A stretch of 64,000 bases of DNA from assembly GCA_044892505.1 (NCBI GenBank), contig CM097882.1, forward strand, positions 547,584,001 to 547,648,000, given 5' to 3'. A program made the position numbers and the translations under genes. How positions within the stretch are numbered: position 1 is the first letter of the stretch; every line of letters starts with the position of its first letter. This stretch comes from Schmidtea nova (Eukaryota). The notes below the pieces were generated by a model. The model searched no databases and was not told where the DNA came from. It saw only the letters and a list, made by a program, of their open reading frames with translations. Shown one piece after another: positions 736 through 57,008 of this stretch.

Positions 736-739
736 AATT

Positions 740-1903: not shown

Positions 1904-1907
1904 ATAT
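1904..1907 (+). other. Left target-site duplication ATAT
   Basis: ATAT lies immediately before TGTTG of LTR1 and recurs at 50519-50522 after CAACA of LTR4. Confidence 0.85.
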
Positions 1908-2895
1908 TGTTGAGGATACCTAAATTCAAAATAATATAATAAATAAACAAAATTACTTGGGGGAAAATTGTCATGGGGAATGACACGATGGATTGGAGCC
2001 TGGGAAAGAAAACGGAAGTAAAAAGGAATGAGAAATGAGAAGGGGAAACAAAAGAAAAGAAATCAGACAAGCAAAACGAAATAGAGGTCAGCACTAATTA
2101 ACTAGTGCAAATAGGAAGAAATTCTAAAGTTGGGAAAAACAAAAACAACAACAAGAATTTTATCTTGACAACCGGTCAGAGATAATGTGGGCAAAAAGCA
2201 AACAAGCCGAAGCGGCAAAAAGGAGAAAAACAGAGATTATCTTGACAGCTGTCAAAGATAATTCCGTTGCTGAGAAAATGAATGGAAAATCATGTTGGAG
2301 AAATGTAACAACAGCTGATAATTTCAAGTGCTACAAAGTGAAGAAGTATAAAAGGAGGAAGCACCTAAAAACAAACACAACATTGTATACAGAAGTGGTT
2401 AGAGAAAATATTTGAGAGAAAGCGTTTGAGAAAATAAAGCTAGTAAAATTCATTAAAAAGGAAGCAGAAAAACGTCCAGAGAAAGTTAAAGAAGAGTCAA
2501 AAGGAGAATCCAATAATTGAAACCAGAAACTAAGGGATAAGCAGCAGGAGCTTATTCAAGCGTTTGAGAAAATAAAGCTAGTAAAATTCAGAGAGTAAAT
2601 CCAAGTCAAATAAAGAAAACAACCAGTCAAATTACCAATTGTTATACTCCCCAGCAGTGAGTGATTTCGAACATCGATTATACACTAGTGCTATTCTTCA
2701 CTATAGTGTCGTAATAAGCACTGTATAATCAGCTGTAGTTTGAATTTGGTCAGTTCATTGTAAATCGAAGTTATTTGTGATAATCAATAAAATTTCCTGT
2801 TGTCAGTTGTTATTGTGGGTCAATAAAGAGCACGTTTTGGAGTCAGGGTAATAATTTGTTAATTATAAAGTCACCAACGACCCAATAACCCAACA
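1908..2895 (+). repeat. LTR1 (988 bp; lacks the 60-bp 5' duplication present in the other LTRs)
   Basis: TGTTG...CAACA termini; followed by the PBS; AATAAA motifs at ~2786 and 2822. Confidence 0.93.
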
Positions 2896-2900
2896 TTATT

Positions 2901-2918
2901 TGGTGAGCCCGACGTGAT
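2901..2918 (+). promoter_or_regulatory. Primer-binding site, tRNA-Trp type (also 18760-18777 and 34612-34629)
   Basis: TGGTGAGCCCGACGTGAT differs at one position from the ASLV tRNA-Trp PBS TGGTGACCCCGACGTGAT; it lies 5 nt after the LTR end. Confidence 0.8.
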
Positions 2919-3177
2919 CAAACGTTGGTGAGGAGCGATTGAAAAAGTAATTGGGATATATCCGGCGAAATAAAGTGGTGAAGAATTATTGAAATAAAAT
3001 TTATTGAAGAGATAGTGAAAATAATTGTGAGGAAAAGAAAATACTAAACAAAATTGTGAAAAGGTAAATTATTAATTGTTGTAATAAATTTGAATTTAGA
3101 TTTTGCGAAACTTGAGAAAATAATTTATTAAAGTGAGTCGATATAATTTACGAAGCAAAAGTAAAAAGGAACCCATA

Positions 3178-4270
3178 ATGAGTAGTGAAGATTTGCCAGT
3201 ATCAGTTATTAAAGAAAATAATGATTTTGCAAGTTGTCAAAGATTACCTGTGGAACAATATGGAGGAGATCCGGTTATTTTTGTAGATTTTATGAGTGAT
3301 TACTACATGTATGCAACGGCGTACGGATGGTCTCAAGCGATTATGATTCAGAGATTACCTTTATATCTTAAAGGAGCAGCTAGAGAGGTTTGGCAACAGA
3401 TTGATAAAAAATTAATTGGTAATGATTGGGCAAAGTTGAAAGATGCGTTAGCTGCAAAACTTATCGGAGGAGATATCAAAAGATTAATGCGTCAAAAGTT
3501 TTATAGTAGAGTTCAAAATCCAAATGAAACAGTGAGCGAATTTGCGTATCATTTGTCAACCCTCGCAAGTAAATCATTTGAAGAAGACTCAAAACAACCA
3601 GGCCTAGCCCAACAAATGCAAGAATTAATCCAAGACCAATTTTTGTCAGGAATAAACAAAGAAATAAAAACCGCATTATGCTGTGTAGATTATGATAATT
3701 TTGATGAACTAGTAAAAAAGGCAATGAAAATCGAATTGAATTTGAAGAGCACCAAAAACAAATCTGATGTGTTCGCGATTATTCCAGCTCAAAGGGAAAG
3801 ATCAATTACACCAACCCAAAACAATTGGGAGCCAGAAAATAGATTCCAGCGATCAAAAAGTCCATCACCCAAATGGAGAACCGAGTTAAATATAAATAGA
3901 CCAAGCCGTAATTTCCAAGGCGCTGAGAGATCCAGAGTGATCCAGTGTGAAAATTGCAAGAAGATTGGCCATTATGCAAACCAGTGTTGGTTCAAAAATA
4001 ATTCCGATAGTACACCCAGAAGAATAACCCAAGATTATCGTACAAACGATAGGGGAACCAATTTTCGGAGAACAGTTCCTGATATAAAATCCAATGTTAA
4101 TGAAGTGCAATGTTATCGCTGCGGTAGAAAAGGACATGTTTCCAGAAATTGTTTTTCAAGATCAAGATCACCCTCAACTTCACCTTCACCACAGAGAGAC
4201 AATGTAAATTTGAACGGACAAATTCAATGCCATTTGTGTAGAAATTATGGACATATTGCAAGATCCTGTC
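3178..4270 (+). other. gag: Gag: retrotransposon capsid-like domain plus three CCHC zinc knuckles
   Basis: RLPLYLKGAAREVW and QNPNETVSEFAYHL-type capsid motifs; CX2CX4HX4C at 3946-3987, 4111-4152 and 4228-4269. Confidence 0.9.
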
Positions 4271-7200
4271 CAAGAAATACGAATAAATTTCAAAGGCCAA
4301 TATTAAAGCGAACAATAAGATTTCAAGATGAAAATCCATCGAATGATAATATAGCCTATGTTCAGCAAGATGGTTTTAGAGAAAAGATCGAAAGCGATGT
4401 TAAACAATTGAACCAAAAACTGAATAAATTGATAGCCAAATTTGAATCGGATGAAGAAACAGATACCCACATGATGACGAGGAAAGAGTTGAGCGAAAGC
4501 GAGTCAGAATCAGATAAAGTACAAATCAATAAAGCTAAAGCCGACATACAAAGTGAAAGGAGCACTGTATTTATTGCCAAAATCAGAAAGTTAGTTGCGG
4601 AACCAGACGTAAATTCCCAGAAAATAACAGAATTATTTACGAGGCTAACTAAAATACCTTTAAGTCTGACAAAAATTAAAACTGTTATTAAACTTTGTGC
4701 AGAATGTTATGCAGCAAGTGTGGAAAAACGAGATGTATTCAAAGATTTTATGAGAATATTTGGGCAATATCTACGGAAAAATAAATGGTTAGATCCTATA
4801 TTTATCCAAATGAATGCTCCAGATGGTACAAAATCCAACTATAAAATCGATGCATACGAGAAAGTACGCGAGCTAAAAAGAGAAGTAATGCACAAGTGTG
4901 AAAGTTGGGCGGTGGAACTCAAATTTATGGATCAAGTATTAGAGGATGGCGAATTCTTGGTAGATTATGGATTAATTCCTGGCGGTGAAAATGAAATGCA
5001 AATGACGAATATGATCGCCAAGGAAAAAACAGTAACAAATGACTCTGACGAAATCAGATTTGAACTAATGGAAGCATTGCTTAAAGGAAACACAGGTGAC
5101 ATTATTGATAAATTAAACAATATTTTGAATTTAGAACTCAAAGTAGAAGACAAGTTAAAAATTCTAGACTGTGTTAGACCCTATATGAATGCGGAAAACG
5201 AATATGGTAAAACAATAAAAACTCTTATTCAAAAATTTGGTCAAGAATTCAGGGAAGAAGGGATTTATAATGAGCCATTCGTAGTACTGTTAAAAATAAA
5301 TGGTCAAGGAGTAGAATATACGGATGAACATTGGTATACGAAAGTGAATAAAATTCGTCGAAGAACAGCAGAAATCATGGGCAATGATGGAATAATTGTG
5401 CTAACGTATAAAGGTTTTGAGCTAGACGATGATGAATACTTATTTGATTGTGGATGTATGCCACGAAAGCGTAACGAAGATAGATTTCTTACGGATCAAA
5501 ATTTTATTAATGATATAATTGCAGTGAAACAAGTGGATACAGATGAAGTAGAAAAAGGTTATAAAATTGAATTACCAGAGTTCGGCAGTGAAACAATGGA
5601 TAATGAGGATGAAATATCAGAGGAACAAGAAATGACAGAACATGGAGAGGAACAGGAAACTGAGCAGAGAATTGAGGAAAGTATAATAAAAACGGAAGTT
5701 AAAAATGAAGCGTATATGACAGAAATGGAGATTGATAATATTACGGAGGAAAGACAACGCAAAGATTTATACGAGGTGAGATGTGAAATAATACAGAGAC
5801 TCCAAGGTGAGAGAGGTCAGAAGGAATTAAAAGAGACTGAAAAGGTTGTACGTGCGCTGGCAAATGAATTATATGGCGAAGCAGCAGAGAAAACACAAGT
5901 AGAATTATATGTGAGAAAAATTGCAAAAAAGTTGAAAAAGAGACTTTATGTGGTCTTGAGATATGTAAAAGACAACAAGGAATTCTGTGATGATGGAGTG
6001 ATAACCAATATGATGACAGGAGAAATGGATAGAGATTTAGTATTGACAATTACGAGTTATATTTTGTTAGAAATCGGGACACACGATTATTTAAATATGG
6101 AAAAACGAGATGAAGTAATCAAAAAGGCGAGCAAAGTATTGTATAAGCATGTGGGCAAATGGATAAAGGAAATTGGAGGCTGGGAGAAATTAGTTAAACA
6201 AAAAACAGAATCATCAGTCGAAAAGAGAGAAAGTTACGAAGGAATACCGAGAGGTAAACCTATGAAACTTCCATTTATAATGTTTATGATCATAATATTA
6301 TGTGCGATTACGACGCAAACAACATCTTTAATTGCGTACGATTGTTCTCAAACCAAAATGGGAAAGATTTATTCCATGGTGGACATGACAGAATGTTCTG
6401 ATGCACACCCAATGAGTTTAACAGTTGAAAATGATGTAAAGTATCATGTATACCAAGAATCAGGCTTTAGACATGCGGTAGTAAGAGAGTGCATTGTAAA
6501 GAGAACGAGCTTTGTGTTTTATTGTGGCAAATGGAGTCACACATCACTAATTAAAATGTATTCAATCCCAAGGCCAGTTGATGTAAACCCAGAAAATTGC
6601 ATGGCTGCGTTTCAAACAGGGGAAGTGAAAATTAGCCCCGAGGTTAAATTGAAAGCTAAATTAAATCATGCTATACGAGAAACAATTATCGAAAAAGGAA
6701 CAATAAAGGCTAATGGGGATTGTAAAGGAGAACCGTACAAAATGAATGGAGAAATTATTGATCAAATTGTTGTGATGGAAGAGTATTTGACGGAATTGAG
6801 AGAATTCCAAGGAGCTTTTGATGACGACACAGGCAAGTTACAAACGCATCCATTCTGCAATATGAAGCAGGCTAGCTGTCAAACAGGAGAATCAATTTTG
6901 GTGTACGAAGTTAAGACAAATCTATGTAATTTAATACATTTGAAAACAATGAGTTTTAATGAAATGAGTGGAGAACAGTTGAGAGAAAGACCGGAAAATT
7001 TGAATGTGGAGGCAAAACCGGACATGACAATCAGAATTACCCCATTGAGAACCAGAAAAACTCCAGTTGTTTTGATGTCAACTTTATTAGATGACGGTAT
7101 GAGATTTATTCGAAAAAATGTGGTAAATAAATGTGGTCAAACGGTGTATGAGACCAATTATAAAGGAATTTATGTATCCAAGAAAAGAGTCGAGGAAGCT

Positions 7201-10200
7201 CAAGTCCAAATACATAGTACGGATATCAAATTGACAAATTATTTTAATAACAAAATAGACTATTTGTTCCACTACAGTCAAAGTATTATGGAAAATATTT
7301 ATAGAGAAATGATATTAAACGATTGTAAGTTGAATAAAGAAATACTACGGAACAGAATGGCGATGGCAGTCACAAATCCAAACTTGGTAGCACCTATGTT
7401 AATATCAGAAAACGGTGTGTTTGCAAGAGTATTTGGAGAAGCATTGTATAGCTATAAATGCAACGAGATTCCCGTGCAAATTATAAAGTACGAGCAATGT
7501 ACCAATGAATTGCCAGTAAGTGTTAATGGTAAATTGAGATTCATGGAGCCAATAACTCGAATATTGTTGGAAGAAGACGCGAAACCTAAACTTTTAAAAT
7601 GTAACCGATTGCTCGCACCATTATATCGACTAACATCAGATTCGTGGATATCATTACCAGATCATAAAGGAGTAAGAAATCCAGAAAAATTAGAATTAAC
7701 AAAACTTGAATATTTAATAAATTTTACATCATTGGACAAATTAGCACAAACTGGGTTGTATTCTCAAGAAGATGTTGAAGAAGCCCGAAGAAATCTACTA
7801 TTTCCATCAAAGAAAGAACGAGTCATTACTGAAATGATTGATACTATATTACCAAGTGGTGAAGGCAAAGTAAATTATGATTATTTACTAACACCAGATC
7901 ATTATAAGAAAGCAACGTACAATACGATGAAAAAGATATGGGGGAAATTCATGTTTTTGGGACAAGCATGTGCAGGATTAATTGGAATTTATGTTATGTT
8001 CGTGGTGATTAAAGTGATAATATCTCAAATACTAACTACTCATCAGCTATATGTTATTTCGGGATGGTCCTGGAAACTGATTATCGGATGTATTCCATTT
8101 CTGGCAAGATTTGTAATTACAAAGCATCAATATAAAGAGATGGGGAAAGTCAAGTCACGACTAAATAATGACGGAAGAGACATTGATTCGAGTTCGGACA
8201 GCGAGAGTGGGAATGGGGGTAAAGTAAAAGTACCTCCAATATATTATTATAAAAACAGTAAAATTAAAATTAATGATATACGAGAAAAATCTAAATCTTT
8301 GAATTTATTACAATCGGTACCACAAACAAGTGAAACAGACACATTCAGTCGATTATGCATTCCAAAAACTTTTCTACCAACAGCACCAATATATCCAGTA
8401 GAGAAGTTAAAAGAAATGAGACCAGTTGAAAACATTGAATTGACAAATGAGCAAATCGCACCAACTAGTGCGGAAATTGAAAGGAGAAACATGCTGGGAT
8501 TACCAGGAAATTATGCATTAATGACAATTGGAAACAAAGGAAGACAGCCAAGAATATGGATACAAGTGAATAAACATAGAGTCGAAGCATTAATAGATTC
8601 AGGCTCAAGCAATACAATATTATCAGATAAATTAATCAATTCAGGGGAAAGAGCACGAATGAAAAGCACAGAAGAAGTTGTACGATCAATGACGAAAAAT
8701 AAATTAAATATCATTGGACAGATCAGAGTAAAACTCAATATTGGAAATAAAGAAATTGTTCATAATGCGCTAATAATGAAAGATAGCCCAGTAATGTGTT
8801 TGGTAGAGATGGATGTGTTGGAGCAATTGGAAGGAGTCTCTCTTGATTTGAAAACCGGAAATCTAATTGTAGGAAAAACAGGAAAAGTTATTCATGAAAC
8901 GGGAGATGTGTTTCTAAATCAAACGTTAAGAGTACCACCTCAGAGTGAAGTTATTTGTTATGTGAATACAATGGGAGTTCCAGACGATGAATTTATATTT
9001 CAACCAAGTGAGAATTTAATTGCCAAATATGATACTCCAATATGCGACGAAGTAGTGAAAGTTCAAGATCAATTAATTCCTGTTCGCATCACTAACAATA
9101 GCGACAAAGAAGTGTCATTTAAACCAAAAACGAAATTAGGAAAGCTAACAAAAATCCTAAAAATCAATAATAAAAGATTACCAAAAAATATTAAAATATA
9201 CAAAGAACCCCAAGTTGACAGTGCAGAGTTGACGCAAGAGCAAACACAAACATTTACAAAATTGTTGAGAAAATATCAAGATATTTTTGCGAAACATGAG
9301 TATGATTTGGGAGTAACTCATATAATTGAACATGAAATTCCATTAATTGATGAAACTCCAATTAAATTACGACCATACAGAATTCCGTATGCGCATCAAG
9401 ACGAAAGCGATAGACAAATAAAGGCTATGAAAGAATTCCATATTATTAGAGACAGTTTTTCACCATTTTCTTCCTCTATTGTTGTAGTCAAAAAGAAAGA
9501 CGGTGAACTGAGATTTTGTATTGACTATCGAAAACTGAATCAAGTGACAAGAAAGGATACGTATCCCATTCCGGTTCCTCAGGAAATGTTTGACAAAATG
9601 GGAGAAGCTCAATATTTTACTGTTATTGATTTAAACAAAGGCTACAATCAATTCAAAGTTAAAGAGACAGATAAAGGGAAAACAGCGTTTTCAGATGGAA
9701 AAGGTTTGTATGAATTTAATGTTTTACCATTTGGTTTAACAGGTGCACCAGCGACATTTCAAAGAGGAATGAATTTTGTGCTGCGAGACATTCCACACGC
9801 CTTGGTATATATTGATGATATTATAATCTTCTCAGGTAATTTCGAAGAGCACATGAGAGATGTGGAAACAGTATTTAAACGGCTCAGAGAAGCAAATCTC
9901 AAAATTAAACCATCAAAATGTGAATGGGGAAAGTCAGAGGTAGTGTATGTTGGACATATTATTTCACGAAAAGGTCTACAACCAAATCCAGAAAATGTTA
10001 AGAAAATTAAAGATTATCCAACTCCAAAAAATGTTGATGATATTAGACAATTTCTCGGGTTAGCAAGCTATTATAGAAAATTTATTAGAAACTTTGCACA
10101 TGTTGCTCAACCATTAACGATGCTATTAAAGAAAACCACAAAATTCGTGTGGGGCAAAGCTCAGCAGGATATTTTCGAAATACTCAAACAAAAGTTAATG

Positions 10201-12822: not shown

Positions 12823-12959
12823 TAAGCTACTATTTTGCATGTAATGACAATATACAGTATTATTTCCCTTATATTTCCTTAGTTAATGATTCTTTAATAG
12901 TCAATTGATAATCTTTTGTTGTAAAATATGTTGTTAAAATTTAAATTATATTGATGTAA

Positions 12960-13035
12960 TTTGATTGGTCGAATAATCACACTGTAGGGGGAGAGAATTT
13001 TTGGATATAAAGATGGCGGTTGTTTTCAGAGTTTG
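12960..13035 (+). promoter_or_regulatory. Putative internal promoter for ORF2
   Basis: ATTGG (reverse CCAAT) at 12964, TATAAA at 13006 and YY1-like AAGATGGCGG at 13010, ~90 bp upstream of ATG 13100. Motif inference only. Confidence 0.45.
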
Positions 13036-13099
13036 ACTTGGAAAATCTTTGGAAAAAAAAAAAAAAAAAAAAAAGATCAAAATTAAATCTAAAGGAAGA

Positions 13100-14320
13100 A
13101 TGGAAAAAATCAACAGACCAGCAAGATTATACGGGAAATATTATCAAGAAAGAAGAAGCTATACAGACAAAGTTATCGTAATAGAAGAAAATTTGAAAAT
13201 TCCTAATTGGGTAAGGTTAGGGAATGAAGAAATGAGAATATGTATGGTGGAATTGGAATGGAAATCCAATACGAAATTTTCAGAAGTGTTAATAAGAAGA
13301 AACGAAGAGACATGGGAGGTTCATGTTTTTAAAGGAAGAGTAGAAATTTTAGAGAATGATGCAACGGTTCTACAAACATTGGAAACTAATTCATCATGGA
13401 AGATATCAAAAGAAATATGGCATAAGAAGATGCGAGCAGCCAATGGAACGGCTTGCATTGTTTTAGAATGCCGAGGACCAGCTCCAACAATCCCGGCATT
13501 AGAACAAATTATGACCAATGAAGAAGAAAATAGGTTACTCCCGATAACCGAAGAAATGTTAAAGCACCGAAAATCATTTTTGAGAAAACAAATGACAAAA
13601 GAAGAAATTAGAAAAAATATTATGTTCATGGACGCGGAATATGGCGTAAGTGAGCAAAACAAGATGGTTCCGCTGTCTATTTGTTTAATAAACTATGACG
13701 GAAGAATATTGTATAACTCATTAATAACCCCCAGAGAAAAGCTAAAAAATTACGTTACCCAAATTCACGGCATCACAGAGAAGATGTCAAGAAATCAAGA
13801 TGATCAATACAAGAGTCAGAGGAAAATTCAGCAATTAACGGCAAGGAAAATCTTGATTGGACATGATCTCCAAAGCGAACTATTGTACAGTGGAGTACAG
13901 ACAAGGGATCTATGGGGTATTCGCGATTTGGCGGCAGCTCGAGCATTGACAAAAAGAAGAGTCACAAGGAACGGGCAATGGTATAAATTGTCAATAGTAG
14001 CCGAAGAAATATGTGGCATCAGAATGCAAAAAGGGAATCATACGGCATTAGAAGACACTGATGCAATTAGAAGAATTTATTTGGCCATAGAAAATGAATG
14101 GCAGGATGATGTAGAGTGTGCTGAAACAACCAGCAAAAGAAAATATTCGTTAGAAGAGTATAGGAAAAGAAAGGCTCCAACAACCAGTGAGCAGATGGAG
14201 GAACCAAAAGAGAAGAGGAAAGCAGAAGTTCAGCAAATGGAACAAGACATTCACATGGTGGAACACATGCATATTGCTCGTAAGAAAACTGCGAAAATGA
14301 TGGTTGAGAAAAAAACTTGA
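13100..14320 (+). CDS. ORF2 copy 1 (406 aa): cupin-like N-terminal domain plus DEDDh 3'-5' exonuclease (ISG20/REXO4-like)
   Basis: ExoI FMDAEYG (13631/13637), NYVTQIHGIT, ExoII LIGHDLQSEL, IRDLA, ExoIII HTALED (14039/14054); identical protein in all three copies. Confidence 0.85.
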   Translation: MEKINRPARLYGKYYQERRSYTDKVIVIEENLKIPNWVRLGNEEMRICMVELEWKSNTKFSEVLIRRNEETWEVHVFKGRVEILENDATVLQTLETNSSWKISKEIWHKKMRAANGTACIVLECRGPAPTIPALEQIMTNEEENRLLPITEEMLKHRKSFLRKQMTKEEIRKNIMFMDAEYGVSEQNKMVPLSICLINYDGRILYNSLITPREKLKNYVTQIHGITEKMSRNQDDQYKSQRKIQQLTARKILIGHDLQSELLYSGVQTRDLWGIRDLAAARALTKRRVTRNGQWYKLSIVAEEICGIRMQKGNHTALEDTDAIRRIYLAIENEWQDDVECAETTSKRKYSLEEYRKRKAPTTSEQMEEPKEKRKAEVQQMEQDIHMVEHMHIARKKTAKMMVEKKT

Positions 14321-14516
14321 TTTATTTAAAAATGCAATTGTGGAAATGGACAAAATAATGATGCAACAAAATAGTGTTGAAAAAGGAAATCAAACAAAAG
14401 AAGGAATAGTGGTCGATAAGATGATCACGTTCAATGGTGAGGAATTGGAAGCAACAAAGGTTGTCGTCACGTATAGAGGAAGAAACCAAACTATCAAAAT
14501 TGTAATTGATAAATAG
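14304..14516 (+). CDS. Probable C-terminal continuation of ORF2 in the +1 frame (also 30162-30374 and 46012-46224)
   Basis: Overlaps the ORF2 stop at an A7 run (14309-14315); removing one A fuses the two frames. Confidence 0.5.
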   Translation: MRKKLDLFKNAIVEMDKIMMQQNSVEKGNQTKEGIVVDKMITFNGEELEATKVVVTYRGRNQTIKIVIDK

Positions 14517-17500
14517 AATTTTATTAAAGAAAGTCTTATTGTTATTTATTTCCTATCCCAAAATTATCTAAATATTAAAAATTCAAAAAAATAATAAAAT
14601 AAAATAAAATAGTAAATATTAATTTCTGCGAAAAATTAAATTCGTAGTCCCATAGTTCCTCGAGTAAAATTAATTTCAGTGAAAAAAAATTAGAAGTATC
14701 AATTAATTAATTGGATAGTAATGATAAAATATATGACAATATATGTAATTGAGTATAGTAAGAATTACGATACTAATACGCCTGTAGTAGAAGTTCGATA
14801 GGACGTCACTCAGGTAATATAAATATGTATAAATATTTAATATAATAAATGTATAAAAAAAAAAAAATTTTTTTTTAATTAAATAATCTGATTATAGGGT
14901 TTTTAGAATGCAGATCTCGAACTTCGGGATTTGTATTCTCAAAACCAATTACCCTACCAGCCTGCAGCACAGGCGTAACCAGCTGGTGAGATAATTTAAA
15001 ATAATTAATAACACCTATGGTAAGTGTAGGTAGCTAAGCGTAATAAAGTAAAATATATGTATATATATACAAAATAATAAAATCAGAGTAGTAAACAATT
15101 AAAACTATAAAATAAAATAAAGATTAAATTAAATTAAAAAAAATTAAATATTTAAAAAGTATCATAAACAAATGCAGGTTTAAATAAAATTAAATAAAAT
15201 GAAATAATATAAAATTATAAACCAGAGTCAATATAGGATTAATAATGGTAATAAATGGTAATGAAATAGCAGGATAGAATTGAAGTAAAATTGAATTGAA
15301 ATAATAAAATAGAGTAAAATAAATCGTCATCATCATATTATATATCATCATTATTATTATCAGTGTTATTATTATTAGTATCATATTACGATTTATTATT
15401 ATTATTATTATTAGGATTATTATTGTTATTATTATAATTATTAGTATCATTAACATTATTATCCTCATCATCATAGTATTATCATTAGTACTACAATTGT
15501 TTTTTTTTGAGGCAATTGGTATTGTTGGTAGTGTAATGAAAAAAAAAAATAAATAAATAAATAAATAAATAAATTTAAACAATTGAGAAAACCTTTCTGA
15601 CGGATTTAATGGATAAATTACCCAAATATTTTCTATCATTTGGTGAGATTGGAACACTTTGGTTTCTTTGGTCGGAGGATGTCGCATCTATCGATAATTC
15701 GGTGGTGTTGCTTTGAGATCATTGATGTTCTTTTCCTGTTCTCGGTTGTGATGGTGATAGTGGGGTGGTGGTGATTATTACAAAGTATTATAANNNNNNN
15801 NNNNNNNNNNNNNNNNNNNNNNNNNNNNNNNNNNNNNNNNNNNNNNNNNNNNNNNNNNNNNNNNNNNNNNNNNNNNNNNNNNNNNNNNNNNNNNNNNNNN
15901 NNNNNNNNNNNNNNNNNNNNNNNNNNNNNNNNNNNNNNNNNNNNNNNNNNNNNNNNNNNNNNNNNNNNNNNNNNNNNNNNNNNNNNNNNNNNNNNNNNNN
16001 NNNNNNNNNNNNNNNNNNNNNNNNNNNNNNNNNNNNNNNNNNNNNNNNNNNNNNNNNNNNNNNNNNNNNNNTTTATCATTATCATGATTATTATTGTTAT
16101 TAATTTCATTCTGTTGTTAGTNNNNNNNNNNNNNNNNNNNNNNNNNNNNNNNNNNNNNNNNNNNNNNNNNNNNNNNNNNNNNNNNNNNNNNNNNNNNNNN
16201 NNNNNNNNNNNNNNNNNNNNNNNNNNNNNNNNNNNNNNNNNNNNNNNNNNNNNNNNNNNNNNNNNNNNNNNNNNNNNNNNNNNNNNNNNNNNNNNNNNNN
16301 NNNNNNNNNNNNNNNNNNNNNNNNNNNNNNNNNNCATCATCATCATATTATTATTATTATTATTATTGTTATTATTATAAATTATTATTAGCCATTATTA
16401 TTATTAAAATAAAAATATAATATTATTATTATAAATTATTATAAACTATTATTATTAAAATATAAATGTTATTATTATTATTTTAGTACTANNNNNNNNN
16501 NNNNNNNNNNNNNNNNNNNNNNNNNNNNNNNNNNNNNNNNNNNNNNNNNNNNNNNNNNNNNNNNNNNNNNNNNNNNNNNNNNNNNNNNNNNNNNNNNNNN
16601 NNNNNNNNNNNNNNNNNNNNNNNNNNNNNNNNNNNNNNNNNNNNNNATTATTGTTACTGTTATTATTATCATTATTATGACCATTATTGTCATCATCATC
16701 ATATTATTATTATTATTATTGTTATTATTATTATAAATTGTTATTAGCCATTATTATTATTAAAATAAAAATATAATATTATTATTATAAATTATTATAA
16801 GTAACTCACATTTTGCAGGATGGGCATAAAATGAAAATCTAGTAGTGGGAATGAAAACATTCCCGAAGGAATGTCGATTATATAGAATCGACATTCCAAC
16901 GAAACCAAATTTAAATTGCTATCTGGACAGATAGCGGCGAGGCAATTTTTTTGGCAATAAATGCCACAGGCACAGAAAGGAAAAAAAAAAAAAAATTCCG
17001 CTATCTTGACAACTAGTCAGGATAGCGGTGAAGTACAAACAAAAATGGAAGGCACATAAGTGCCATCAAGATAGCAAAATGAATTAAAAATAAAATTTTT
17101 TTATTATAAAGATAACTAAATTAATTAATAAAATTATTATTANNNNNNNNNNNNNNNNNNNNNNNNNNNNNNNNNNNNNNNNNNNNNNNNNNNNNNNNNN
17201 NNNNNNNNNNNNNNNNNNNNNNNNNNNNNNNNNNNNNNNNNNNNNNNNNNNNNNNNNNNNNNNNNNNNNNNNNNNNNNNNNNNNNNNNNNNNNNNNNNNN
17301 NNNNNNNNNNNNNNNNNNNNNNNNNNNNNNNNNNNNNNNNNNNNNNNNNNNNNNNNNNNNNNNNNNNNNNNNNNNNNNNNNNNNNNNNNNNNNNNNNNNN
17401 NNNNNNNNNNTTATCACTATTGTCAATACTGATGATAAAATTATAGGAATTAATTTAAATTTGTAATATTAGTATATTTATTATCACTACGATAATTATC

Positions 17501-17692
17501 ATTATAAAAAAAAATGGGTAGTGCTATTGTTATTACAGTTAGTATGAAAATTGTTATCCCTATTATCGTAAACTAGTATTTATTTAAAAATAATAAATTA
17601 GAATATTATAGAGAAGCGTTTATTGGAAAATAATAGTGGGGGCATTGTACGAAAGATAACTTAAGATTTTAATTCGAGGACGAATTTTTTTT
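14517..17692 (+). repeat. Long 3' non-coding region rich in (ATT)n/(ATC)n microsatellites, partly N-masked, with a ~110-bp internal direct repeat (16335-16445 and 16690-16800)
   Basis: Direct reading of the sequence; the same layout occurs at 30375-33544 and 46225-49456. Confidence 0.85.
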
Positions 17693-17704
17693 AAAGGGGG
17701 GAGA
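17693..17704 (+). promoter_or_regulatory. Polypurine tract (also 33545-33556 and 49457-49468)
   Basis: AAAGGGGGGAGA lies 2 nt before the TGTTG LTR start. Confidence 0.9.
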
Positions 17705-17706
17705 TA

Positions 17707-18754
17707 TGTTGAGGATACCTAAATTCAAAATAATATAATAAATAAACAAAATTACTTAGGGGAATTACTTGAGGATACCTAAATTCAAAATAATATAATA
17801 AATAAACAAAATTACTTGGGGGAAAATTGTCATGGGGAATGACACGATGGATTGGAGCCTGGGAAAGAAAACGGAAGTAAAAAGGAATGAGAAATGAGAA
17901 GGGGAAACAAAAGAAAAGAAATCAGACAAGCAAAACGAAATAGAGGTCAGCACTAATTAACTAGTGCAAATAGGAAGAAATTCTAAAGTTGGGAAAAACA
18001 AAAACAACAACAAGAATTTTATCTTGACAACCGGTCAGAGATAATGTGGGCAAAAAGCAAACAAGCCGAAGCGGCAAAAAGGAGAAAAACAGAGATTATC
18101 TTGACAGCTGTCAAAGATAATTCCGTTGCTGAGAAAATGAATGGAAAATCATGTTGGAGAAATGTAACAACAGCTGATAATTTCAAGTGCTACAAAGTGA
18201 AGAAGTATAAAAGGAGGAAGCACCTAAAAACAAACATAACATTGTATACAGAAGTGGTTAGAGAAAATATTTGAGAGAAAGCGTTTGAGAAAATAAAGCT
18301 AGTAAAATTCATTAAAAAGGAAGCAGAAAAACGTCCAGAGAAAGTTAAAGAAGAGTCAAAAGGAGAATCCAATAATTGAAACCAGAAACTAAGGGATAAG
18401 CAGCAGGAGCTTATTCAAGCGTTTGAGAAAATAAAGCTAGTAAAATTCAGAGAGTAAATCCAAGTCAAATAAAGAAAACAACCAGTCAAATTACCAATTG
18501 TTATACTCCCCAGCAGTGAGTGATTTCGAACATCGATTATACACTAGTGCTATTCTTCACTATAGTGTCGTAATAAGCACTGTATAATCAGCTGTAGTTT
18601 GAATTTGGTCAGTTCATTGTAAATCGAAGTTATTTGTGATAATCAATAAAATTTCCTGTTGTCAGTTGTTATTGTGGGTCAATAAAGAGCACGTTTTGGA
18701 GTCAGGGTAATAATTTGTTAATTATAAAGTCACCAACGACCCAATAACCCAACA
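17707..18754 (+). repeat. LTR2 (1048 bp, shared by copies 1 and 2)
   Basis: PPT upstream and PBS downstream; 60-bp duplication at the 5' end; private C>T at 18237. Confidence 0.93.
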
Positions 18755-19036
18755 TTATTTGGTGAGCCCGACGTGATCAAACGTTGGTGAGGAGCGATTG
18801 AAAAAGTAATTGGGATATATCCGGCGAAATAAAGTGGTGAAGAATTATTGAAATAAAATTTATTGAAGAGATAGTGAAAATAATTGTGAGGAAAAGAAAA
18901 TACTAAACAAAATTGTGAAAAGGTAAATTATTAATTGTTGTAATAAATTTGAATTTAGATTTTGCGAAACTTGAGAAAATAATTTATTAAAGTGAGTCGA
19001 TATAATTTACGAAGCAAAAGTAAAAAGGAACCCATA

Positions 19037-22000
19037 ATGAGTAGTGAAGATTTGCCAGTATCAGTTATTAAAGAAAATAATGATTTTGCAAGTTGTCAAA
19101 GATTACCTGTGGAACAATATGGAGGAGATCCGGTTATTTTTGTAGATTTTATGAGTGATTACTACATGTATGCAACGGCGTACGGATGGTCTCAAGCGAT
19201 TATGATTCAGAGATTACCTTTATATCTTAAAGGAGCAGCTAGAGAGGTTTGGCAACAGATTGATAAAAAATTAATTGGTAATGATTGGGCAAAGTTGAAA
19301 GATGCGTTAGCTGCAAAACTTATCGGAGGAGATATCAAAAGATTAATGCGTCAAAAGTTTTATAGTAGAGTTCAAAATCCAAATGAAACAGTGAGCGAAT
19401 TTGCGTATCATTTGTCAACCCTCGCAAGTAAATCATTTGAAGAAGACTCAAAACAACCAGGCCTAGCCCAACAAATGCAAGAATTAATCCAAGACCAATT
19501 TTTGTCAGGAATAAACAAAGAAATAAAAACCGCATTATGCTGTGTAGATTATGATAATTTTGATGAACTAGTAAAAAAGGCAATGAAAATCGAATTGAAT
19601 TTGAAGAGCACCAAAAACAAATCTGATGTGTTCGCGATTATTCCAGCTCAAAGGGAAAGATCAATTACACCAACCCAAAACAATTGGGAGCCAGAAAATA
19701 GATTCCAGCGATCAAAAAGTCCATCACCCAAATGGAGAACCGAGTTAAATATAAATAGACCAAGCCGTAATTTCCAAGGCGCTGAGAGATCCAGAGTGAT
19801 CCAGTGTGAAAATTGCAAGAAGATTGGCCATTATGCAAACCAGTGTTGGTTCAAAAATAATTCCGATAGTACACCCAGAAGAATAACCCAAGATTATCGT
19901 ACAAACGATAGGGGAACCAATTTTCGGAGAACAGTTCCTGATATAAAATCCAATGTTAATGAAGTGCAATGTTATCGCTGCGGTAGAAAAGGACATGTTT
20001 CCAGAAATTGTTTTTCAAGATCAAGATCACCCTCAACTTCACCTTCACCACAGAGAGACAATGTAAATTTGAACGGACAAATTCAATGCCATTTGTGTAG
20101 AAATTATGGACATATTGCAAGATCCTGTCCAAGAAATACGAATAAATTTCAAAGGCCAATATTAAAGCGAACAATAAGATTTCAAGATGAAAATCCATCG
20201 AATGATAATATAGCCTATGTTCAGCAAGATGGTTTTAGAGAAAAGATCGAAAGCGATGTTAAACAATTGAACCAAAAACTGAATAAATTGATAGCCAAAT
20301 TTGAATCGGATGAAGAAACAGATACCCACATGATGACGAGGAAAGAGTTGAGCGAAAGCGAGTCAGAATCAGATAAAGTACAAATCAATAAAGCTAAAGC
20401 CGACATACAAAGTGAAAGGAGCACTGTATTTATTGCCAAAATCAGAAAGTTAGTTGCGGAACCAGACGTAAATTCCCAGAAAATAACAGAATTATTTACG
20501 AGGCTAACTAAAATACCTTTAAGTCTGACAAAAATTAAAACTGTTATTAAACTTTGTGCAGAATGTTATGCAGCAAGTGTGGAAAAACGAGATGTATTCA
20601 AAGATTTTATGAGAATATTTGGGCAATATCTACGGAAAAATAAATGGTTAGATCCTATATTTATCCAAATGAATGCTCCAGATGGTACAAAATCCAACTA
20701 TAAAATCGATGCATACGAGAAAGTACGCGAGCTAAAAAGAGAAGTAATGCACAAGTGTGAAAGTTGGGCGGTGGAACTCAAATTTATGGATCAAGTATTA
20801 GAGGATGGCGAATTCTTGGTAGATTATGGATTAATTCCTGGCGGTGAAAATGAAATGCAAATGACGAATATGATCGCCAAGGAAAAAACAGTAACAAATG
20901 ACTCTGACGAAATCAGATTTGAACTAATGGAAGCATTGCTTAAAGGAAACACAGGTGACATTATTGATAAATTAAACAATATTTTGAATTTAGAACTCAA
21001 AGTAGAAGACAAGTTAAAAATTCTAGACTGTGTTAGACCCTATATGAATGCGGAAAACGAATATGGTAAAACAATAAAAACTCTTATTCAAAAATTTGGT
21101 CAAGAATTCAGGGAAGAAGGGATTTATAATGAGCCATTCGTAGTACTGTTAAAAATAAATGGTCAAGGAGTAGAATATACGGATGAACATTGGTATACGA
21201 AAGTGAATAAAATTCGTCGAAGAACAGCAGAAATCATGGGCAATGATGGAATAATTGTGCTAACGTATAAAGGTTTTGAGCTAGACGATGATGAATACTT
21301 ATTTGATTGTGGATGTATGCCACGAAAGCGTAACGAAGATAGATTTCTTACGGATCAAAATTTTATTAATGATATAATTGCAGTGAAACAAGTGGATACA
21401 GATGAAGTAGAAAAAGGTTATAAAATTGAATTACCAGAGTTCGGCAGTGAAACAATGGATAATGAGGATGAAATATCAGAGGAACAAGAAATGACAGAAC
21501 ATGGAGAGGAACAGGAAACTGAGCAGAGAATTGAGGAAAGTATAATAAAAACGGAAGTTAAAAATGAAGCGTATATGACAGAAATGGAGATTGATAATAT
21601 TACGGAGGAAAGACAACGCAAAGATTTATACGAGGTGAGATGTGAAATAATACAGAGACTCCAAGGTGAGAGAGGTCAGAAGGAATTAAAAGAGACTGAA
21701 AAGGTTGTACGTGCGCTGGCAAATGAATTATATGGCGAAGCAGCAGAGAAAACACAAGTAGAATTATATGTGAGAAAAATTGCAAAAAAGTTGAAAAAGA
21801 GACTTTATGTGGTCTTGAGATATGTAAAAGACAACAAGGAATTCTGTGATGATGGAGTGATAACCAATATGATGACAGGAGAAATGGATAGAGATTTAGT
21901 ATTGACAATTACGAGTTATATTTTGTTAGAAATCGGGACACACGATTATTTAAATATGGAAAAACGAGATGAAGTAATCAAAAAGGCGAGCAAAGTATTG

Positions 22001-28000: not shown

Positions 28001-28680
28001 ACTTAACGAAAGTAGTTCTCACTCTTAATCTGTCAATGAACAATTACAAAAAACCACTTCGTAATAAAGGAATTTATACAAACAATCAATTGTTTGAAAG
28101 AAATGTTCAAATTGAGATGATATACTGGAATAAAACGAATCAAGTTCAAATTGAAAATTGTGATACTACAATAATTGTTGCATATAAAGCTCAGGTCGAG
28201 GGAAAAGTAACTATTATTATAAATAATAAAATTAAGGTGGTATTGAATGAACACCGAAACAGAGCGAGAGTCAGTACTCAGAACTCAGGAACCGAATCAC
28301 AAACAAGCAAACTCCTTATAGAAAACCAATGCTGCAAAGGGAAAACCAATCCAGACCGATGGCAAACTATTTGCATTAAAGACAGACAGATTTATTTCGT
28401 TCTCGATCAACCCTCTAAAGAAACCCTTGATCACAATCTGACTCTACCATTAACTCTTTCATGTATAAAAATCGAAAACTTTTCATTAAACTATAAAGAA
28501 AATTCATTCACTAACAATTGTGTTGATATGTTCTCTGTATGTATCATAAGGGCAAGACAAAGAGTGATCTTGCTCGTTTGCTTTATCCTCATTTCACGAA
28601 CTGACAAAAGAAACAATTCTAATTGTGATTTTCAATATTCTGAGCCGCAGATATCAATGTGGTTGGAATCAAGGGTGTAG
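19037..28680 (+). pseudogene. Copy 2 polyprotein, split by a 1-bp deletion between PR and RT (ORFs 18992-24934 and 24901-28680)
   Basis: GTAGTGAAAGTT in copy 1 versus GTAGTAAAGTT at ~24916; also R>Q at 27803. Confidence 0.85.
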
Positions 28681-50518: not shown

Positions 50519-50522
50519 ATAT
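50519..50522 (+). other. Right target-site duplication ATAT
   Basis: Matches 1904-1907. Confidence 0.85.
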
Positions 50523-56959: not shown

Positions 56960-57008
56960 GTTAGATTTCATACTATCATTTTAAATAATTTTATATAAAT
57001 TAAAAAAG

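What the first reader, a model, noticed from the sequence alone, without database searches (positions are those of the whole stretch)
1908..18754. A complex, retrovirus-like Ty3/Gypsy genome with a fusogen and a candidate host-counter-defence kit
Seen in sequence: one ~16.8 kb LTR element carries the normal gag/pro/pol plus a fusion glycoprotein, two ubiquitin-like domains, a Bcl-2-like domain, a second glycoprotein-like tail and a separately encoded ISG20-like exonuclease. Established: viral Bcl-2 homologues (herpes-, pox- and adenoviruses) block apoptosis, and viral DEDDh exonucleases such as arenavirus NP degrade immunostimulatory RNA. Inference: this may be an infectious invertebrate retrovirus-like lineage that independently acquired anti-apoptosis, ubiquitin-pathway and anti-RNA-defence accessory functions. 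I do not know of this combination in a described Metaviridae element. Near-identical LTRs and open frames suggest recent activity.
Basis: partly seen in the sequence, partly recalled or inferred. Interest (0 to 1): 0.92.

Follow-up and report, generated by a model that had tools for sequence, protein, structure and literature searches.

The report
Complex gag-env-pol Gypsy element, tandem array
This is a retrovirus-like Ty3/Gypsy element of an unidentified invertebrate, present as three tandem copies, that carries a fusion glycoprotein captured from an RNA virus between gag and pol, plus ubiquitin-like modules, a possible Bcl-2-like domain and a separate ISG20-type exonuclease gene; the basic layout is already published, the accessory genes apparently are not.

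Summary
1908-18754 is an LTR element, but it is only the first unit of a tandem array: four LTRs and three internal regions (1908-50518), with one ATAT target duplication around the whole array. In copy 1 a single 3229-codon ORF encodes gag (three CCHC knuckles), two helical+ubiquitin-like modules, a candidate Bcl-2-like domain, a Monjiviricetes-type fusion glycoprotein (Pfam E 5e-88), PR, RT, RNase H, IN and a weakly glycoprotein-like tail. A second ORF encodes an ISG20/REXO-type DEDDh exonuclease. The N runs lie in the 3' non-coding region and cut no supported gene. Metagenome relatives (30-50% identity) share gag-Ubl-G-PR-pol single ORFs and an exonuclease-like ORF beside pol, so this is a family, not a one-off. 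The ubiquitin fold is supported by profile search. The Bcl-2 fold is only suggested: a BH2-like motif and non-significant hits that are nearly all Bcl-2 family. The gag-env-pol order with a gB/Chuviridae-type env is published (Sacco 2022; Chary & Hayashi 2026), and exonuclease ORFs are known in rotifer LTR elements. I found no report of the Ubl modules, the Bcl-2-like domain or the DEDDh ORF. The counter-defence reading is untested; a role in budding and polyprotein topology fits at least as well. Verdict: a new variant of a known kind.

The parts
1908..50518 (+). Whole tandem array: LTR-internal-LTR-internal-LTR-internal-LTR
   Evidence: Self-comparison: units 99.9% identical, period about 15.86 kb; boundaries read
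1904..1907 (.). Left target-site duplication ATAT
   Evidence: Same 4 bases at 50519-50522, directly outside TGTTG...CAACA
50519..50522 (.). Right target-site duplication ATAT
1908..2895 (+). LTR1 (988 bp, lacks the 60-bp duplication)
17707..18754 (+). LTR2 (1048 bp; 60-bp tandem duplication at its 5' end)
33559..34606 (+). LTR3
49471..50518 (+). LTR4 (last LTR of the array)
2901..2918 (+). Primer-binding-site-like sequence starting TGG, 5 nt after LTR1
   Evidence: Read directly; the tRNA was not identified
17693..17706 (+). Polypurine tract directly before LTR2
   Evidence: Read directly
3133..12822 (+). Copy 1 polyprotein ORF, 3229 codons, uninterrupted (first ATG at 3178)
3133..4332 (+). 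Gag: Retrotrans_gag capsid part and three CCHC zinc knuckles
   Evidence: Pfam; sequence
4519..5010 (+). Helical + ubiquitin-like module 1 (aa 463-626)
   Evidence: Module HMM; homologous to module 2; ubiquitin-family hits in PDB
5083..5490 (+). Helical + ubiquitin-like module 2 (aa 651-786)
5755..6207 (+). Candidate Bcl-2-like all-helical domain with a BH2-like W-x3-GGW motif (aa 875-1025)
   Evidence: Profile vs PDB: more than 50 Bcl-xL/Bcl-2 chains at E about 0.02; TIGR00865 E 0.03; Foldseek top hits nearly all Bcl-2 family but E 0.3-1 on a pLDDT-48 model
6262..8052 (+). Fusion glycoprotein: signal-like segment (aa 1044-1068), ectodomain with 14 Cys, transmembrane segment (aa 1606-1639)
   Evidence: PF24664 E 5e-88 to 7e-92, profile positions 4-611 of 653; hydropathy
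8233..8409 (+). Cluster of the three late-budding motif types (PPxY, PTAP, YPxnL) between the glycoprotein anchor and the protease
   Evidence: Each motif occurs once in the whole polyprotein, all within about 60 residues; local shuffle frequency 2e-5
8542..8835 (+). Aspartic protease
   Evidence: Pfam
9487..10539 (+). Reverse transcriptase and RNase H
   Evidence: Pfam; Ty3 best in PDB
10861..11922 (+). Integrase (H2C2 zinc domain, core, C-terminal part)
   Evidence: Pfam; alignment to Ty3 Gag-Pol reaches about aa 2930
12022..12819 (+). Post-integrase tail: Met plus a weakly hydrophobic start, 4 N-x-S/T, 7 Cys, strong C-terminal hydrophobic segment; no homologues
13049..14320 (+). ORF2 (first ATG 13100): DEDDh exonuclease, domain at 13601-14113
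   Evidence: RNase_T 28.8 bits (cut-off 24); ISG20 and ISG20L2 in PDB; homologous ORFs in relatives
14321..17692 (+). 3' non-coding region, AT-rich microsatellite-like, holding the four N runs (15794-17410)
18992..28680 (+). Copy 2 polyprotein gene, broken (1 frameshift)
28907..30178 (+). Copy 2 ORF2, identical to copy 1
34844..44531 (+). Copy 3 polyprotein gene, broken (2 frameshifts, 1 premature stop)
44757..46028 (+). Copy 3 ORF2, open, 2 substitutions

Best explanation
[quoted passage not shown] It inserted once (a single ATAT target duplication) and then grew to three units that share LTRs, most simply by unequal exchange between LTRs. It belongs to an old family of roughly 16-kb elements. 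Family-wide hallmarks are (i) a helical + ubiquitin-like module after the Gag zinc knuckles, (ii) a Monjiviricetes/Chuviridae-type, gB-like fusion glycoprotein upstream of the protease, usually in the same ORF as pol, and (iii) one or two DEDDh-exonuclease-like ORFs beside pol (directly downstream in L006 and L007). The window's sub-lineage adds a helical domain with a BH2-like motif directly before the glycoprotein's signal segment. Likely mechanism (inferred, not shown): the giant ORF is made as a membrane-threaded polyprotein. Gag, the Ubl modules and the Bcl-2-like domain stay in the cytosol. The internal signal segment sends the glycoprotein ectodomain into the ER lumen and could leave the Bcl-2-like domain membrane-anchored at its C-terminus, as cellular Bcl-2 proteins are. 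The glycoprotein anchor returns the chain to the cytosol, where a PPxY/PTAP/YPxnL cluster and PR-RT-RH-IN follow. The Ubl modules and this motif cluster would recruit the host ubiquitin/ESCRT budding machinery for enveloped particles. The Bcl-2-like domain would delay death of the producing cell. The ORF2 nuclease would trim element or host nucleic-acid 3' ends, either in replication or to limit sensing. Shown: anatomy, domain homologies, conservation in relatives. Inferred: topology, processing and every function.
For: Array, LTRs, TSD, PBS and PPT. Domain content. Family: six long single-ORF relatives with PF24664+PR+RT+IN, three of them with gag and the Ubl module. L006 is a complete unit of about 16.7 kb with a terminal repeat and two exonuclease-like ORFs after pol. 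L007 has an exonuclease-like ORF directly after pol; in L001 one lies upstream of gag. Ubiquitin fold: Ubl-only profile of 7 sequences, polyubiquitin E 1e-7, ISG15 2e-4, all 60 listed hits ubiquitin family; sub-threshold Pfam ubiquitin hits in relatives. Bcl-2-like: W-x3-GGW invariant in the three lineage members; the profile hits Bcl-xL/Bcl-2 at the collinear BH2 position; TIGR00865; Foldseek top list almost wholly A1/BAK/MCL1/Bcl-xL over about 150 columns. A hydrophobic segment follows the motif by about 27 residues in the window, and the two are contiguous in one frame in L001. Late-motif cluster: with YPxnL in the same linker in all six long relatives. Exonuclease motifs D, E, H, D present, with Glu at the third acidic position.
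Against: No expression, protein or particle data. The Bcl-2 evidence is below significance (E 0.02-1; model pLDDT 48, TM about 0.2), Pfam Bcl-2 gave no hit, and PDB over-representation of Bcl-2 proteins inflates the hit count. The domain is absent from P0015-P0020. In L002 an in-frame stop separates it from the glycoprotein. The Ubl domains have no C-terminal Gly-Gly. The exonuclease-like ORFs in L001 and L007 and one of the two in L006 have lost the DxE and His motifs, so catalysis is not the conserved property everywhere. The late-motif statistic is post hoc, and YPxnL also fits a YxxPhi sorting signal. Two of the three copies are broken. The tandem array could be partly an assembly product. 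The host is unknown.
Confidence: 0.72

Rival explanations
1. One reading: the accessory domains are a host counter-defence kit (anti-apoptosis by the Bcl-2-like domain, manipulation of the ubiquitin pathway, degradation of immunostimulatory RNA by the ISG20-like nuclease) in an infectious invertebrate retrovirus.
For: All three kinds of module are present or plausible. The exonuclease ORF and the Ubl module are conserved across relatives at 25-50% identity. The best single-domain Ubl matches are ISG15 and the best nuclease match is ISG20, both antiviral-pathway proteins. The element has an intact envelope gene and one open copy.
Against: No functional data. The ISG15 and ISG20 hits are marginal, reflect fold families and do not show ancestry. 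The Ubls lack the Gly-Gly needed for conjugation or de-conjugation mimicry. Several relatives carry catalytically degenerate exonuclease copies. The Bcl-2 fold is unproven. Whether the unknown host has matching sensing pathways is unknown.
Confidence: 0.3
2. The Bcl-2 likeness is convergent. Residues 875-1025 are a lineage-specific helical spacer or pre-signal region of the glycoprotein that happens to carry a W-x3-GGW motif.
For: The significant-looking part of every hit is one stretch of about 24 residues. There is no Pfam Bcl-2 hit. The AF2 model has low confidence, with Foldseek TM about 0.2. The domain is missing in most relatives.
Against: The motif is invariant in three members that share only 17-25% identity. 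It sits at the C-terminal end of an all-helical domain of about 150 residues and is followed by a hydrophobic segment, as in cellular Bcl-2 proteins. Foldseek alignments cover about 150 columns, and different Bcl-2 subfamilies fill almost the whole top list.
Confidence: 0.4
3. The ORF2 product acts mainly as a non-catalytic nucleic-acid-binding protein (as the DEDD-derived Maelstrom and EXD1 do in piRNA biology) or in 3'-end processing of the element's own RNA or cDNA, not in immune evasion.
For: Motif I and the His are lost in three of the five element-borne relatives aligned. The window's copy has Glu at the third acidic position, the same D-E-E-D change reported for the rotifer retroelement DEDDy ORFs, whose authors propose 3'-end processing or small-RNA roles (PMC5408684).
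Against: The window's copy and one L006 copy keep D, E, H and D. P0012, at 62% identity, keeps Glu at the third acidic position and the H..D motif; its N-terminal motif I is missing from the gene model.
Confidence: 0.35
4. The three-unit array, or part of it, is an assembly artefact (a collapsed or expanded repeat, or reads from extrachromosomal one-LTR circles), and the genome holds a single copy here.
For: Units are 99.9% identical. Each unit has the same four unreadable stretches. The single-base deletions that break copies 2 and 3 could be consensus errors.
Against: The units differ by specific substitutions and by N-run lengths. LTR1 lacks the 60-bp duplication that LTR2-4 carry. The array is flanked by unique DNA with a matching 4-bp duplication. 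The deletions are not in homopolymer runs.
Confidence: 0.2

Closest known systems
Non-canonical GAG-ENV-POL Ty3/gypsy 'errantiviruses' of Nematoda, Bryozoa and Platyhelminthes (Chary & Hayashi, eLife 2026, PMC13524379; nematode ERVs of Sacco et al. 2022, J Gen Virol, doi 10.1099/jgv.0.001739, not readable here)
   Same: Ty3/gypsy pol; the envelope gene lies between gag and pol; the env is of the gB-like class III kind, related to RNA-virus glycoproteins; multiple near-identical copies with LTRs.
   Different: The readable paper contains none of the words ubiquitin, Bcl-2, exonuclease or accessory. Here the element is about 16 kb, with about 680 extra residues between gag and env and a further ORF after pol. 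Membership of the published clades was not tested (no RT tree; host unknown).
Anakin: mosquito BEL/Pao elements with a captured Chuviridae glycoprotein (Dezordi et al. 2020, PMC7642597)
   Same: An LTR retroelement that captured a Jingchuvirales-type glycoprotein, modelled on herpesvirus gB.
   Different: A BEL/Pao backbone, not Ty3/gypsy; the glycoprotein is reported as fused with or associated with the Pao element; no accessory domains reported.
Juno and Vesta LTR retrotransposons of bdelloid rotifers with an exonuclease ORF3 (Rodriguez, Kenefick & Arkhipova 2017, PMC5408684)
   Same: LTR elements with an extra ORF after pol that encodes a DEDD-superfamily 3'-5' exonuclease; the acidic motif is changed to D-E-E-D, as in the window's ORF2.
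   Different: The rotifer ORFs are DEDDy (RNase D/WRN-like). This one is DEDDh (RNase T/ISG20/REXO-like, Pfam PF00929) and co-occurs with a class III env, Ubl modules and a Bcl-2-like candidate.
ISG20 / ISG20L2 / REXO-family cellular DEDDh exonucleases
   Same: Best solved matches (1wlj E 7.5e-7, 7yw5 E 1.7e-6); the DxE and H-x4-D motifs align; cellular homologues P0013 and P0014 at 29% identity sit among ordinary cellular genes.
   Different: An N-terminal extension of about 185 residues with no known domain; Glu replaces the third Asp; encoded inside a retroelement.
Cellular and viral Bcl-2 family proteins
   Same: An all-helical domain of about 150 residues ending in a BH2-like W-x3-GGW motif, followed by a hydrophobic segment.
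   Different: No significant sequence or structure match; BH1 and BH3 not recognised; embedded in a polyprotein directly before a glycoprotein signal segment.
Ubiquitin-like domains inside viral polyproteins and the ubiquitin/late-domain budding pathway of retroviruses (established knowledge, not tested here)
   Same: A beta-grasp domain built into a viral polyprotein near Gag, together with PPxY, PTAP and YPxnL motifs.
   Different: Here each Ubl is preceded by a conserved helical domain, is duplicated, lacks a Gly-Gly end, and the motif cluster lies after the glycoprotein anchor rather than in Gag.

Membership tests
Ty3/Gypsy (Metaviridae) LTR retroelement | Direct LTRs with TG...CA ends, flanked by a 4-6 bp target duplication | tested here: met
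   TGTTG...CAACA; ATAT on both sides of the array
Ty3/Gypsy (Metaviridae) LTR retroelement | PBS after the 5' LTR and a polypurine tract before the 3' LTR | tested here: met
   TGG-starting sequence at 2901; purine tract at 17693-17706; the tRNA was not identified
Ty3/Gypsy (Metaviridae) LTR retroelement | Domain order PR-RT-RNase H-IN, with RT closest to Ty3/gypsy | tested here: met
   Pfam order; Ty3 Gag-Pol E 7e-118, well ahead of caulimovirus- and retrovirus-type chains. No phylogenetic tree was made
Published GAG-ENV-POL gypsy clades (Sacco 2022; Chary & Hayashi 2026) | The env ORF or domain lies between gag and pol | tested here: met
   Glycoprotein at aa 1044-1640, between the zinc knuckles and the protease
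Published GAG-ENV-POL gypsy clades (Sacco 2022; Chary & Hayashi 2026) | The RT/IN branch lies inside those clades; host in Nematoda, Bryozoa or Platyhelminthes | not tested
Class III viral fusion glycoprotein (Monjiviricetes/Chuviridae G, gB-like) | Sequence membership of the glycoprotein family over its full length, with a signal segment and a C-terminal anchor | tested here: met
   PF24664 E 5e-88, profile positions 4-611 of 653; hydrophobic segments at aa 1041-1069 and 1606-1639
Class III viral fusion glycoprotein (Monjiviricetes/Chuviridae G, gB-like) | Class III fold (domains I-V, bipartite fusion loops) | not tested
The fold class is taken from the literature (PMC13524379, PMC7642597)
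Ubiquitin-like (beta-grasp) domain | Profile or sequence similarity to the ubiquitin family over the whole domain | tested here: met
   Profile A7: polyubiquitin 1e-7, ISG15 2e-4, positions 2-66 of 74, all 60 listed hits ubiquitin family. Pfam ubiquitin is below its cut-off in relatives (23.5 vs 25.4 bits) and absent for the window's own protein
Ubiquitin-like (beta-grasp) domain | C-terminal Gly-Gly for conjugation (type 1 modifiers only) | tested here: not met
   No Gly-Gly after the last strand in either module; so these are built-in Ubl domains, not modifiers
Bcl-2 family | Significant match to the Bcl-2 domain (Pfam PF00452 or solved structures) | tested here: not met
   No Pfam hit; PDB profile hits at E about 0.02, covering 24 residues; TIGR00865 E 0.03, 14 bits against a cut-off of 283
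Bcl-2 family | Eight-helix bundle fold | tested here: inconclusive
   AF2 on 2 sequences: 7 helices, pLDDT 48. Foldseek top list is nearly all Bcl-2 family, but E 0.3-1 and TM about 0.2
Bcl-2 family | BH2 motif near the C-terminal end, followed by a membrane anchor | tested here: met
   W-x3-GGW invariant in the window, L001 and L002; a hydrophobic segment follows about 27 residues later
DEDDh exonuclease (RNase T / ISG20 / REXO) | Pfam PF00929 above its gathering score, with solved relatives | tested here: met
   28.8 bits against a cut-off of 24; ISG20 E 7.5e-7
DEDDh exonuclease (RNase T / ISG20 / REXO) | Catalytic D, E, D, H, D all present | tested here: inconclusive
   D, E, H and D are present; the third acidic position is Glu in the window and in P0012. 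Activity cannot be judged from sequence

The most novel reading that the evidence does not exclude
A lineage of invertebrate Metaviridae has become a 'complex retrovirus' independently of the vertebrate ones. Besides a captured RNA-virus fusogen, it stably carries host-derived accessory functions: a tail-anchored Bcl-2-type cell-death regulator released from the polyprotein at the glycoprotein's signal segment, built-in ubiquitin-like modules with a three-motif late domain for ESCRT-dependent budding, and an ISG20-type nuclease gene that has been duplicated and sometimes inactivated within the family.
Probability: 0.3. Interest if true: 0.85.

Novelty: new variant of a known kind. Interest (0 to 1): 0.62.

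Why it matters
Retroelements with an envelope gene mark the border between transposons and viruses. The gag-env-pol layout has only just been described, and its accessory content has not. A family that keeps ubiquitin-like modules and a DEDDh nuclease ORF across 30-50% protein divergence, and in one branch adds a possible Bcl-2 homologue, would show that invertebrate Metaviridae can reach the gene complexity otherwise known from complex retroviruses and large DNA viruses. It would also give a concrete, sequence-defined system for asking how such elements exit cells and cope with host responses. If the Bcl-2 and function claims fail, what remains is still a well-defined new sub-family with a conserved extra gene.

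Tried and rejected
1. Pfam and NCBIfam on the accessory region and the tail gave no ubiquitin or Bcl-2 domain at curated thresholds.
2. phmmer of the accessory region and the tail against PDB gave nothing useful.
3. The word-indexed protein search with residues 365-1045 gave no hit in the 1776-5650 aa size class. The exhaustive search found only 11 relatives.
4. AF2 on the 681-residue accessory region without an alignment was unusable (pLDDT 41), so no fold search was run on it.
5. The JGI metagenome scan with the accessory-region alignment returned only the contig already held.
6. The exact look-up of the window's ORF2 product is not on record, so the host could not be named. UniParc ids of close relatives (UPI00060EF8E5, UPI0006075296, UPI000602B34F) carry no organism in these tools.
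7. Rfam and tRNA scans of the window found nothing.
8. Splice model for ORF2: a GTGAGT at 3133 and a TTTTCAG about 70 nt before the ORF2 ATG exist, but such motifs occur about once per 2-2.5 kb in the element, and none is found at the equivalent places in relatives. I rejected this as evidence.
9. An HMM of the Bcl-2-like region and a search for the GGW motif found nothing in the six long relatives.
10. The tail has no homologue in L001 or L006-L008.
11. The supplements of PMC13524379 are not held, and Sacco et al. 2022 is not held.
An overlapping stretch was later only read with translate.
13. I deliberately did not scan the viral collections with the glycoprotein, so as not to fetch animal viruses.
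None was entered into a tool, a note or this report, and none was used as evidence.

Full report
**Observation**

The self-comparison of the window shows more. The sequence from 1910 repeats with a period of about 15.86 kb three times at 99.9% identity, and a fourth LTR closes the array.

Reading the junctions gives these LTRs:
- LTR1 1908-2895 (988 bp)
- LTR2 17707-18754
- LTR3 33559-34606
- LTR4 49471-50518 (LTR2-4 are 1048 bp each)

All four have TGTTG...CAACA ends. LTR2-4 carry a 60-bp tandem duplication at their 5' end that LTR1 lacks. Otherwise LTR1 and LTR2 differ at one base.

The same four bases, ATAT, flank the whole array (1904-1907 and 50519-50522). A TGG-starting primer-binding-like sequence begins 5 nt after LTR1, and a purine tract (17693-17706) directly precedes LTR2. 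So there was one insertion, now LTR-int-LTR-int-LTR-int-LTR. The simplest route is unequal exchange between LTRs; integration of a multimer or an assembly effect are alternatives.

**The N runs**

All four N runs of the finding (15794-17410) lie after the ORF2 stop (14320) and before the 3' LTR. They sit in AT-rich microsatellite-like sequence. Only X-filled mechanical ORFs cross them, so no supported reading frame is at stake.

The same four gaps recur in each unit with different lengths, and the readable islands between them are colinear and 99.6-100% identical. Continuity across the gaps cannot be proven, so the element length is an estimate. I did not fill or look up these letters.

**Coding content of copy 1**

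A single ORF, 3133-12822 (3229 codons, first ATG at 3178), has no stop. Pfam and direct reading give this order:

| Part | Residues | Evidence |
|---|---|---|
| Gag: Retrotrans_gag and three CCHC knuckles | to about aa 380 | |
| Helical + Ubl module 1 | aa 463-626 | |
| Helical + Ubl module 2 | aa 651-786 | |
| Acidic linker | about aa 787-875 | |
| All-helical Bcl-2-like candidate | about aa 875-1025 | |
| Met plus hydrophobic signal-like segment | aa 1044-1068 | |
| PF24664 Monjiviricetes fusion glycoprotein | through the anchor at aa 1606-1639 | E 5e-88, profile positions 4-611 of 653 |
| Linker with late-budding motifs | aa 1701-1759 | |
| Aspartic protease | aa 1804-1901 | |
| RT | aa 2119-2277 | |
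| RNase H | aa 2340-2469 | |
| Integrase | aa 2577-2748, similarity to Ty3 up to about aa 2930 | |
| Tail | aa 2964-3229 | |

The two modules are homologous to each other (27% identity, E 3e-5). The pol part is closest to Ty3 Gag-Pol (E 7e-118), far ahead of other reverse-transcribing groups. That supports Ty3/Gypsy, although no tree was made.

ORF2 (13049-14320, ATG at 13100) holds an RNase_T domain above Pfam's cut-off (28.8 vs 24 bits). Its best solved matches are ISG20 (E 7.5e-7) and ISG20L2.

**State of the copies**

Copy 1 is open throughout. The polyprotein gene of copy 2 has one frameshift. That of copy 3 has two frameshifts and one premature stop. ORF2 is open in all three copies.

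**Relatives and architecture**

The exhaustive protein search with the accessory region found only 11 relatives. All have the gag/CCHC + helical/Ubl type.

A word-indexed search with the glycoprotein-protease part found six long proteins carrying PF24664 + PR + RT + RNase H + IN in one ORF. Two of them (3761 and 3771 aa) also contain gag and the Ubl module.

Their contigs show the same plan:
- L006 is a complete unit of about 16.7 kb with a terminal repeat. It has one 3771-codon ORF followed by two exonuclease-like ORFs.
- L007 has an exonuclease-like ORF right after pol.
- L001 has gag-Ubl, then glycoprotein-PR. An exonuclease-like ORF lies upstream of gag on the same contig, possibly the end of a neighbouring unit.
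- L002 has gag-Ubl-Bcl-2-like-glycoprotein in one frame with a single in-frame stop.
- P0012, an annotated protein in UniParc, is 62% identical to the window's nuclease.

The helical+Ubl module and the exonuclease-like ORF therefore recur across the family. They are not accidents of this locus.

The post-integrase region varies. P0015 and P0016 have a second protease-like domain there, P0019 has an immunoglobulin domain, and the window has a cysteine- and sequon-bearing tail with a C-terminal hydrophobic segment. That tail has no detectable homologue, so 'second glycoprotein' is plausible but weak.

**Ubiquitin-like domains**

Pfam does not call them in the window's own protein. It gives sub-threshold ubiquitin hits in relatives.

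A profile of seven Ubl-only segments hits polyubiquitin (E 1e-7), ISG15 (2e-4), UHRF1 and ubiquilin. All 60 listed hits belong to the ubiquitin family and cover nearly the whole profile (the earlier, broader profile is).

I accept the beta-grasp fold. There is no Gly-Gly end, so these are built-in domains and not conjugatable modifiers.

**Bcl-2-like domain**

Points in favour:
- A W-x3-GGW motif is invariant in the window, L001 and L002, which share only 17-25% identity.
- The three-sequence profile hits more than 50 Bcl-xL/Bcl-2 chains at the collinear BH2 position (E about 0.02).
- NCBIfam's bcl-2 model hits the same place (E 0.03).
- An AF2 model, although poor (pLDDT 48), is all-helical. 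Foldseek's top list is almost wholly A1, BAK, MCL1 and Bcl-xL over about 150 columns.
- A hydrophobic segment follows about 27 residues later, as in tail-anchored cellular Bcl-2 proteins.

Points against:
- Nothing is significant.
- TM-scores are about 0.2.
- The evidence leans on one short motif.
- PDB holds hundreds of Bcl-2 chains, which inflates the hit count.
- The domain is absent from the six long relatives.

I put the chance of a true Bcl-2 fold at about 0.55.

**Exonuclease**

The window's protein keeps the DxE and H-x4-D motifs. The residue aligned with ISG20's third acidic residue is Glu.

One L006 paralogue keeps all the motifs. The other L006 copy, L007 and L001 have lost motif I and the His. 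Catalysis may therefore be dispensable in parts of the family.

Cellular homologues (P0013, P0014, 29% identity) sit among ordinary cellular genes, consistent with a host origin for the fold.

**Extra observation: late-budding motifs**

PPxY, PTAP and YPxnL each occur exactly once in the 3229-residue protein. All three fall within about 60 residues, between the glycoprotein anchor and the protease. In 200,000 shuffles of that linker all three co-occurred at a frequency of 2e-5. A YPxnL motif lies in the same linker in all six long relatives.

The test is post hoc, and YPxnL also fits a sorting signal. Still, it matches the classical late-budding motif set of enveloped viruses (established knowledge).

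**Mechanism (inferred)**

The polyprotein would be threaded through the membrane. Gag, the Ubl modules and the Bcl-2-like domain would stay cytosolic. The internal signal segment would send the glycoprotein ectodomain into the lumen and could leave the Bcl-2-like domain C-terminally anchored. After the anchor would come the cytosolic late-motif linker and PR-RT-RH-IN.

The Ubl modules together with the motif cluster would serve ubiquitin/ESCRT-dependent budding. The Bcl-2-like domain would help the producing cell survive. ORF2 would process nucleic-acid 3' ends or bind nucleic acid.

Nothing here separates the two.

**Comparison with what is known**

- The gag-env-pol order with a gB-type env is published for Nematoda, Bryozoa and Platyhelminthes, and for nematodes earlier by Sacco et al. 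2022. The readable paper contains none of the words ubiquitin, Bcl-2, exonuclease or accessory.
- Capture of a Chuviridae glycoprotein by BEL/Pao elements is known.
- Exonuclease ORF3s, of the DEDDy type and with a D-E-E-D change, are known in rotifer Juno and Vesta elements.
- A full-text search for the combination found nothing relevant.

The finding is therefore a new variant of a known kind. The backbone and env position are known; the Ubl modules, the DEDDh ORF and the Bcl-2-like candidate appear undescribed.

**Limits**

- The host is not identified.
- No RT phylogeny was made.
- No structure was predicted for the glycoprotein or the tail.
- There are no expression data.

Noticed in passing
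window 8233-8409 (polyprotein aa 1701-1759): PPxY, PTAP and YPxnL each occur once in the polyprotein, and all lie in the linker between the glycoprotein anchor and the protease. The relatives have YPxnL at the same place.
   Followed up: partly
window 17707-17826, and the same place in LTR3 and LTR4: A 60-bp tandem duplication at the 5' end of LTR2-4 is absent from LTR1. Each repeat ends in a short purine-rich stretch that resembles the PPT region.
   Followed up: partly
window 63477-64000: The start of a second, divergent element of the same family (gag 48-61% identical, in two frames) runs off the window end, just after an N run at 62823-62952.
   Followed up: partly
window 53470-54595: Remnant of a piggyBac-type transposase (DDE_Tnp_1_7 E 4.5e-36, plus its zinc finger in a separate ORF); it looks broken.
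   Followed up: no
window 56696-56998: An exon-like ORF with an RH1 domain (RILP homology 1, E 6e-28), typical of JIP3/JIP4-type adaptor genes. It is probably a host gene next to the array.
   Followed up: no
window 1-833 and 911-1843: Dense short tandem repeats (31-bp unit about 9 copies, 11-bp unit, 53-bp unit) lie upstream of the array, together with an unannotated 310-codon ORF with no family match.
   Followed up: no
window 15794-17410, 31651-33262, 47501-49174: The same four unreadable stretches recur in each unit with different lengths (for example 278, 284 and 320 for the first), in (ATT)n-like sequence. This suggests a variable or unassemblable simple repeat in the 3' untranslated region.
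   Followed up: partly
L006 12411-13973 and 14249-15688; L007 13863-15191; L001 1-2340: Relatives carry one or two exonuclease-like ORFs. Only one L006 copy keeps the DxE and His motifs; the others look catalytically dead.
   Followed up: partly
P0019 aa 2481-2554; P0015/P0016 aa about 3072-3179: The post-integrase tails of relatives hold other modules: an immunoglobulin domain (P0019) and a second aspartic-protease-like domain (P0015, P0016).
   Followed up: no
P0018 and P0001: Public annotation artefacts. P0018, a glycoprotein-pol polyprotein of this family, is deposited as a hypothetical protein of a Flavobacteriaceae MAG. P0001 is a gene model that fuses a gag/Ubl fragment to a phosphomevalonate kinase.
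   Followed up: no
window 3133-3138 and about 13023-13029: A consensus-like splice donor lies in the leader before the gag ATG, and an acceptor-like TTTTCAG lies about 70 nt before the ORF2 ATG. Neither is conserved in relatives, and both are compatible with chance.
   Followed up: yes
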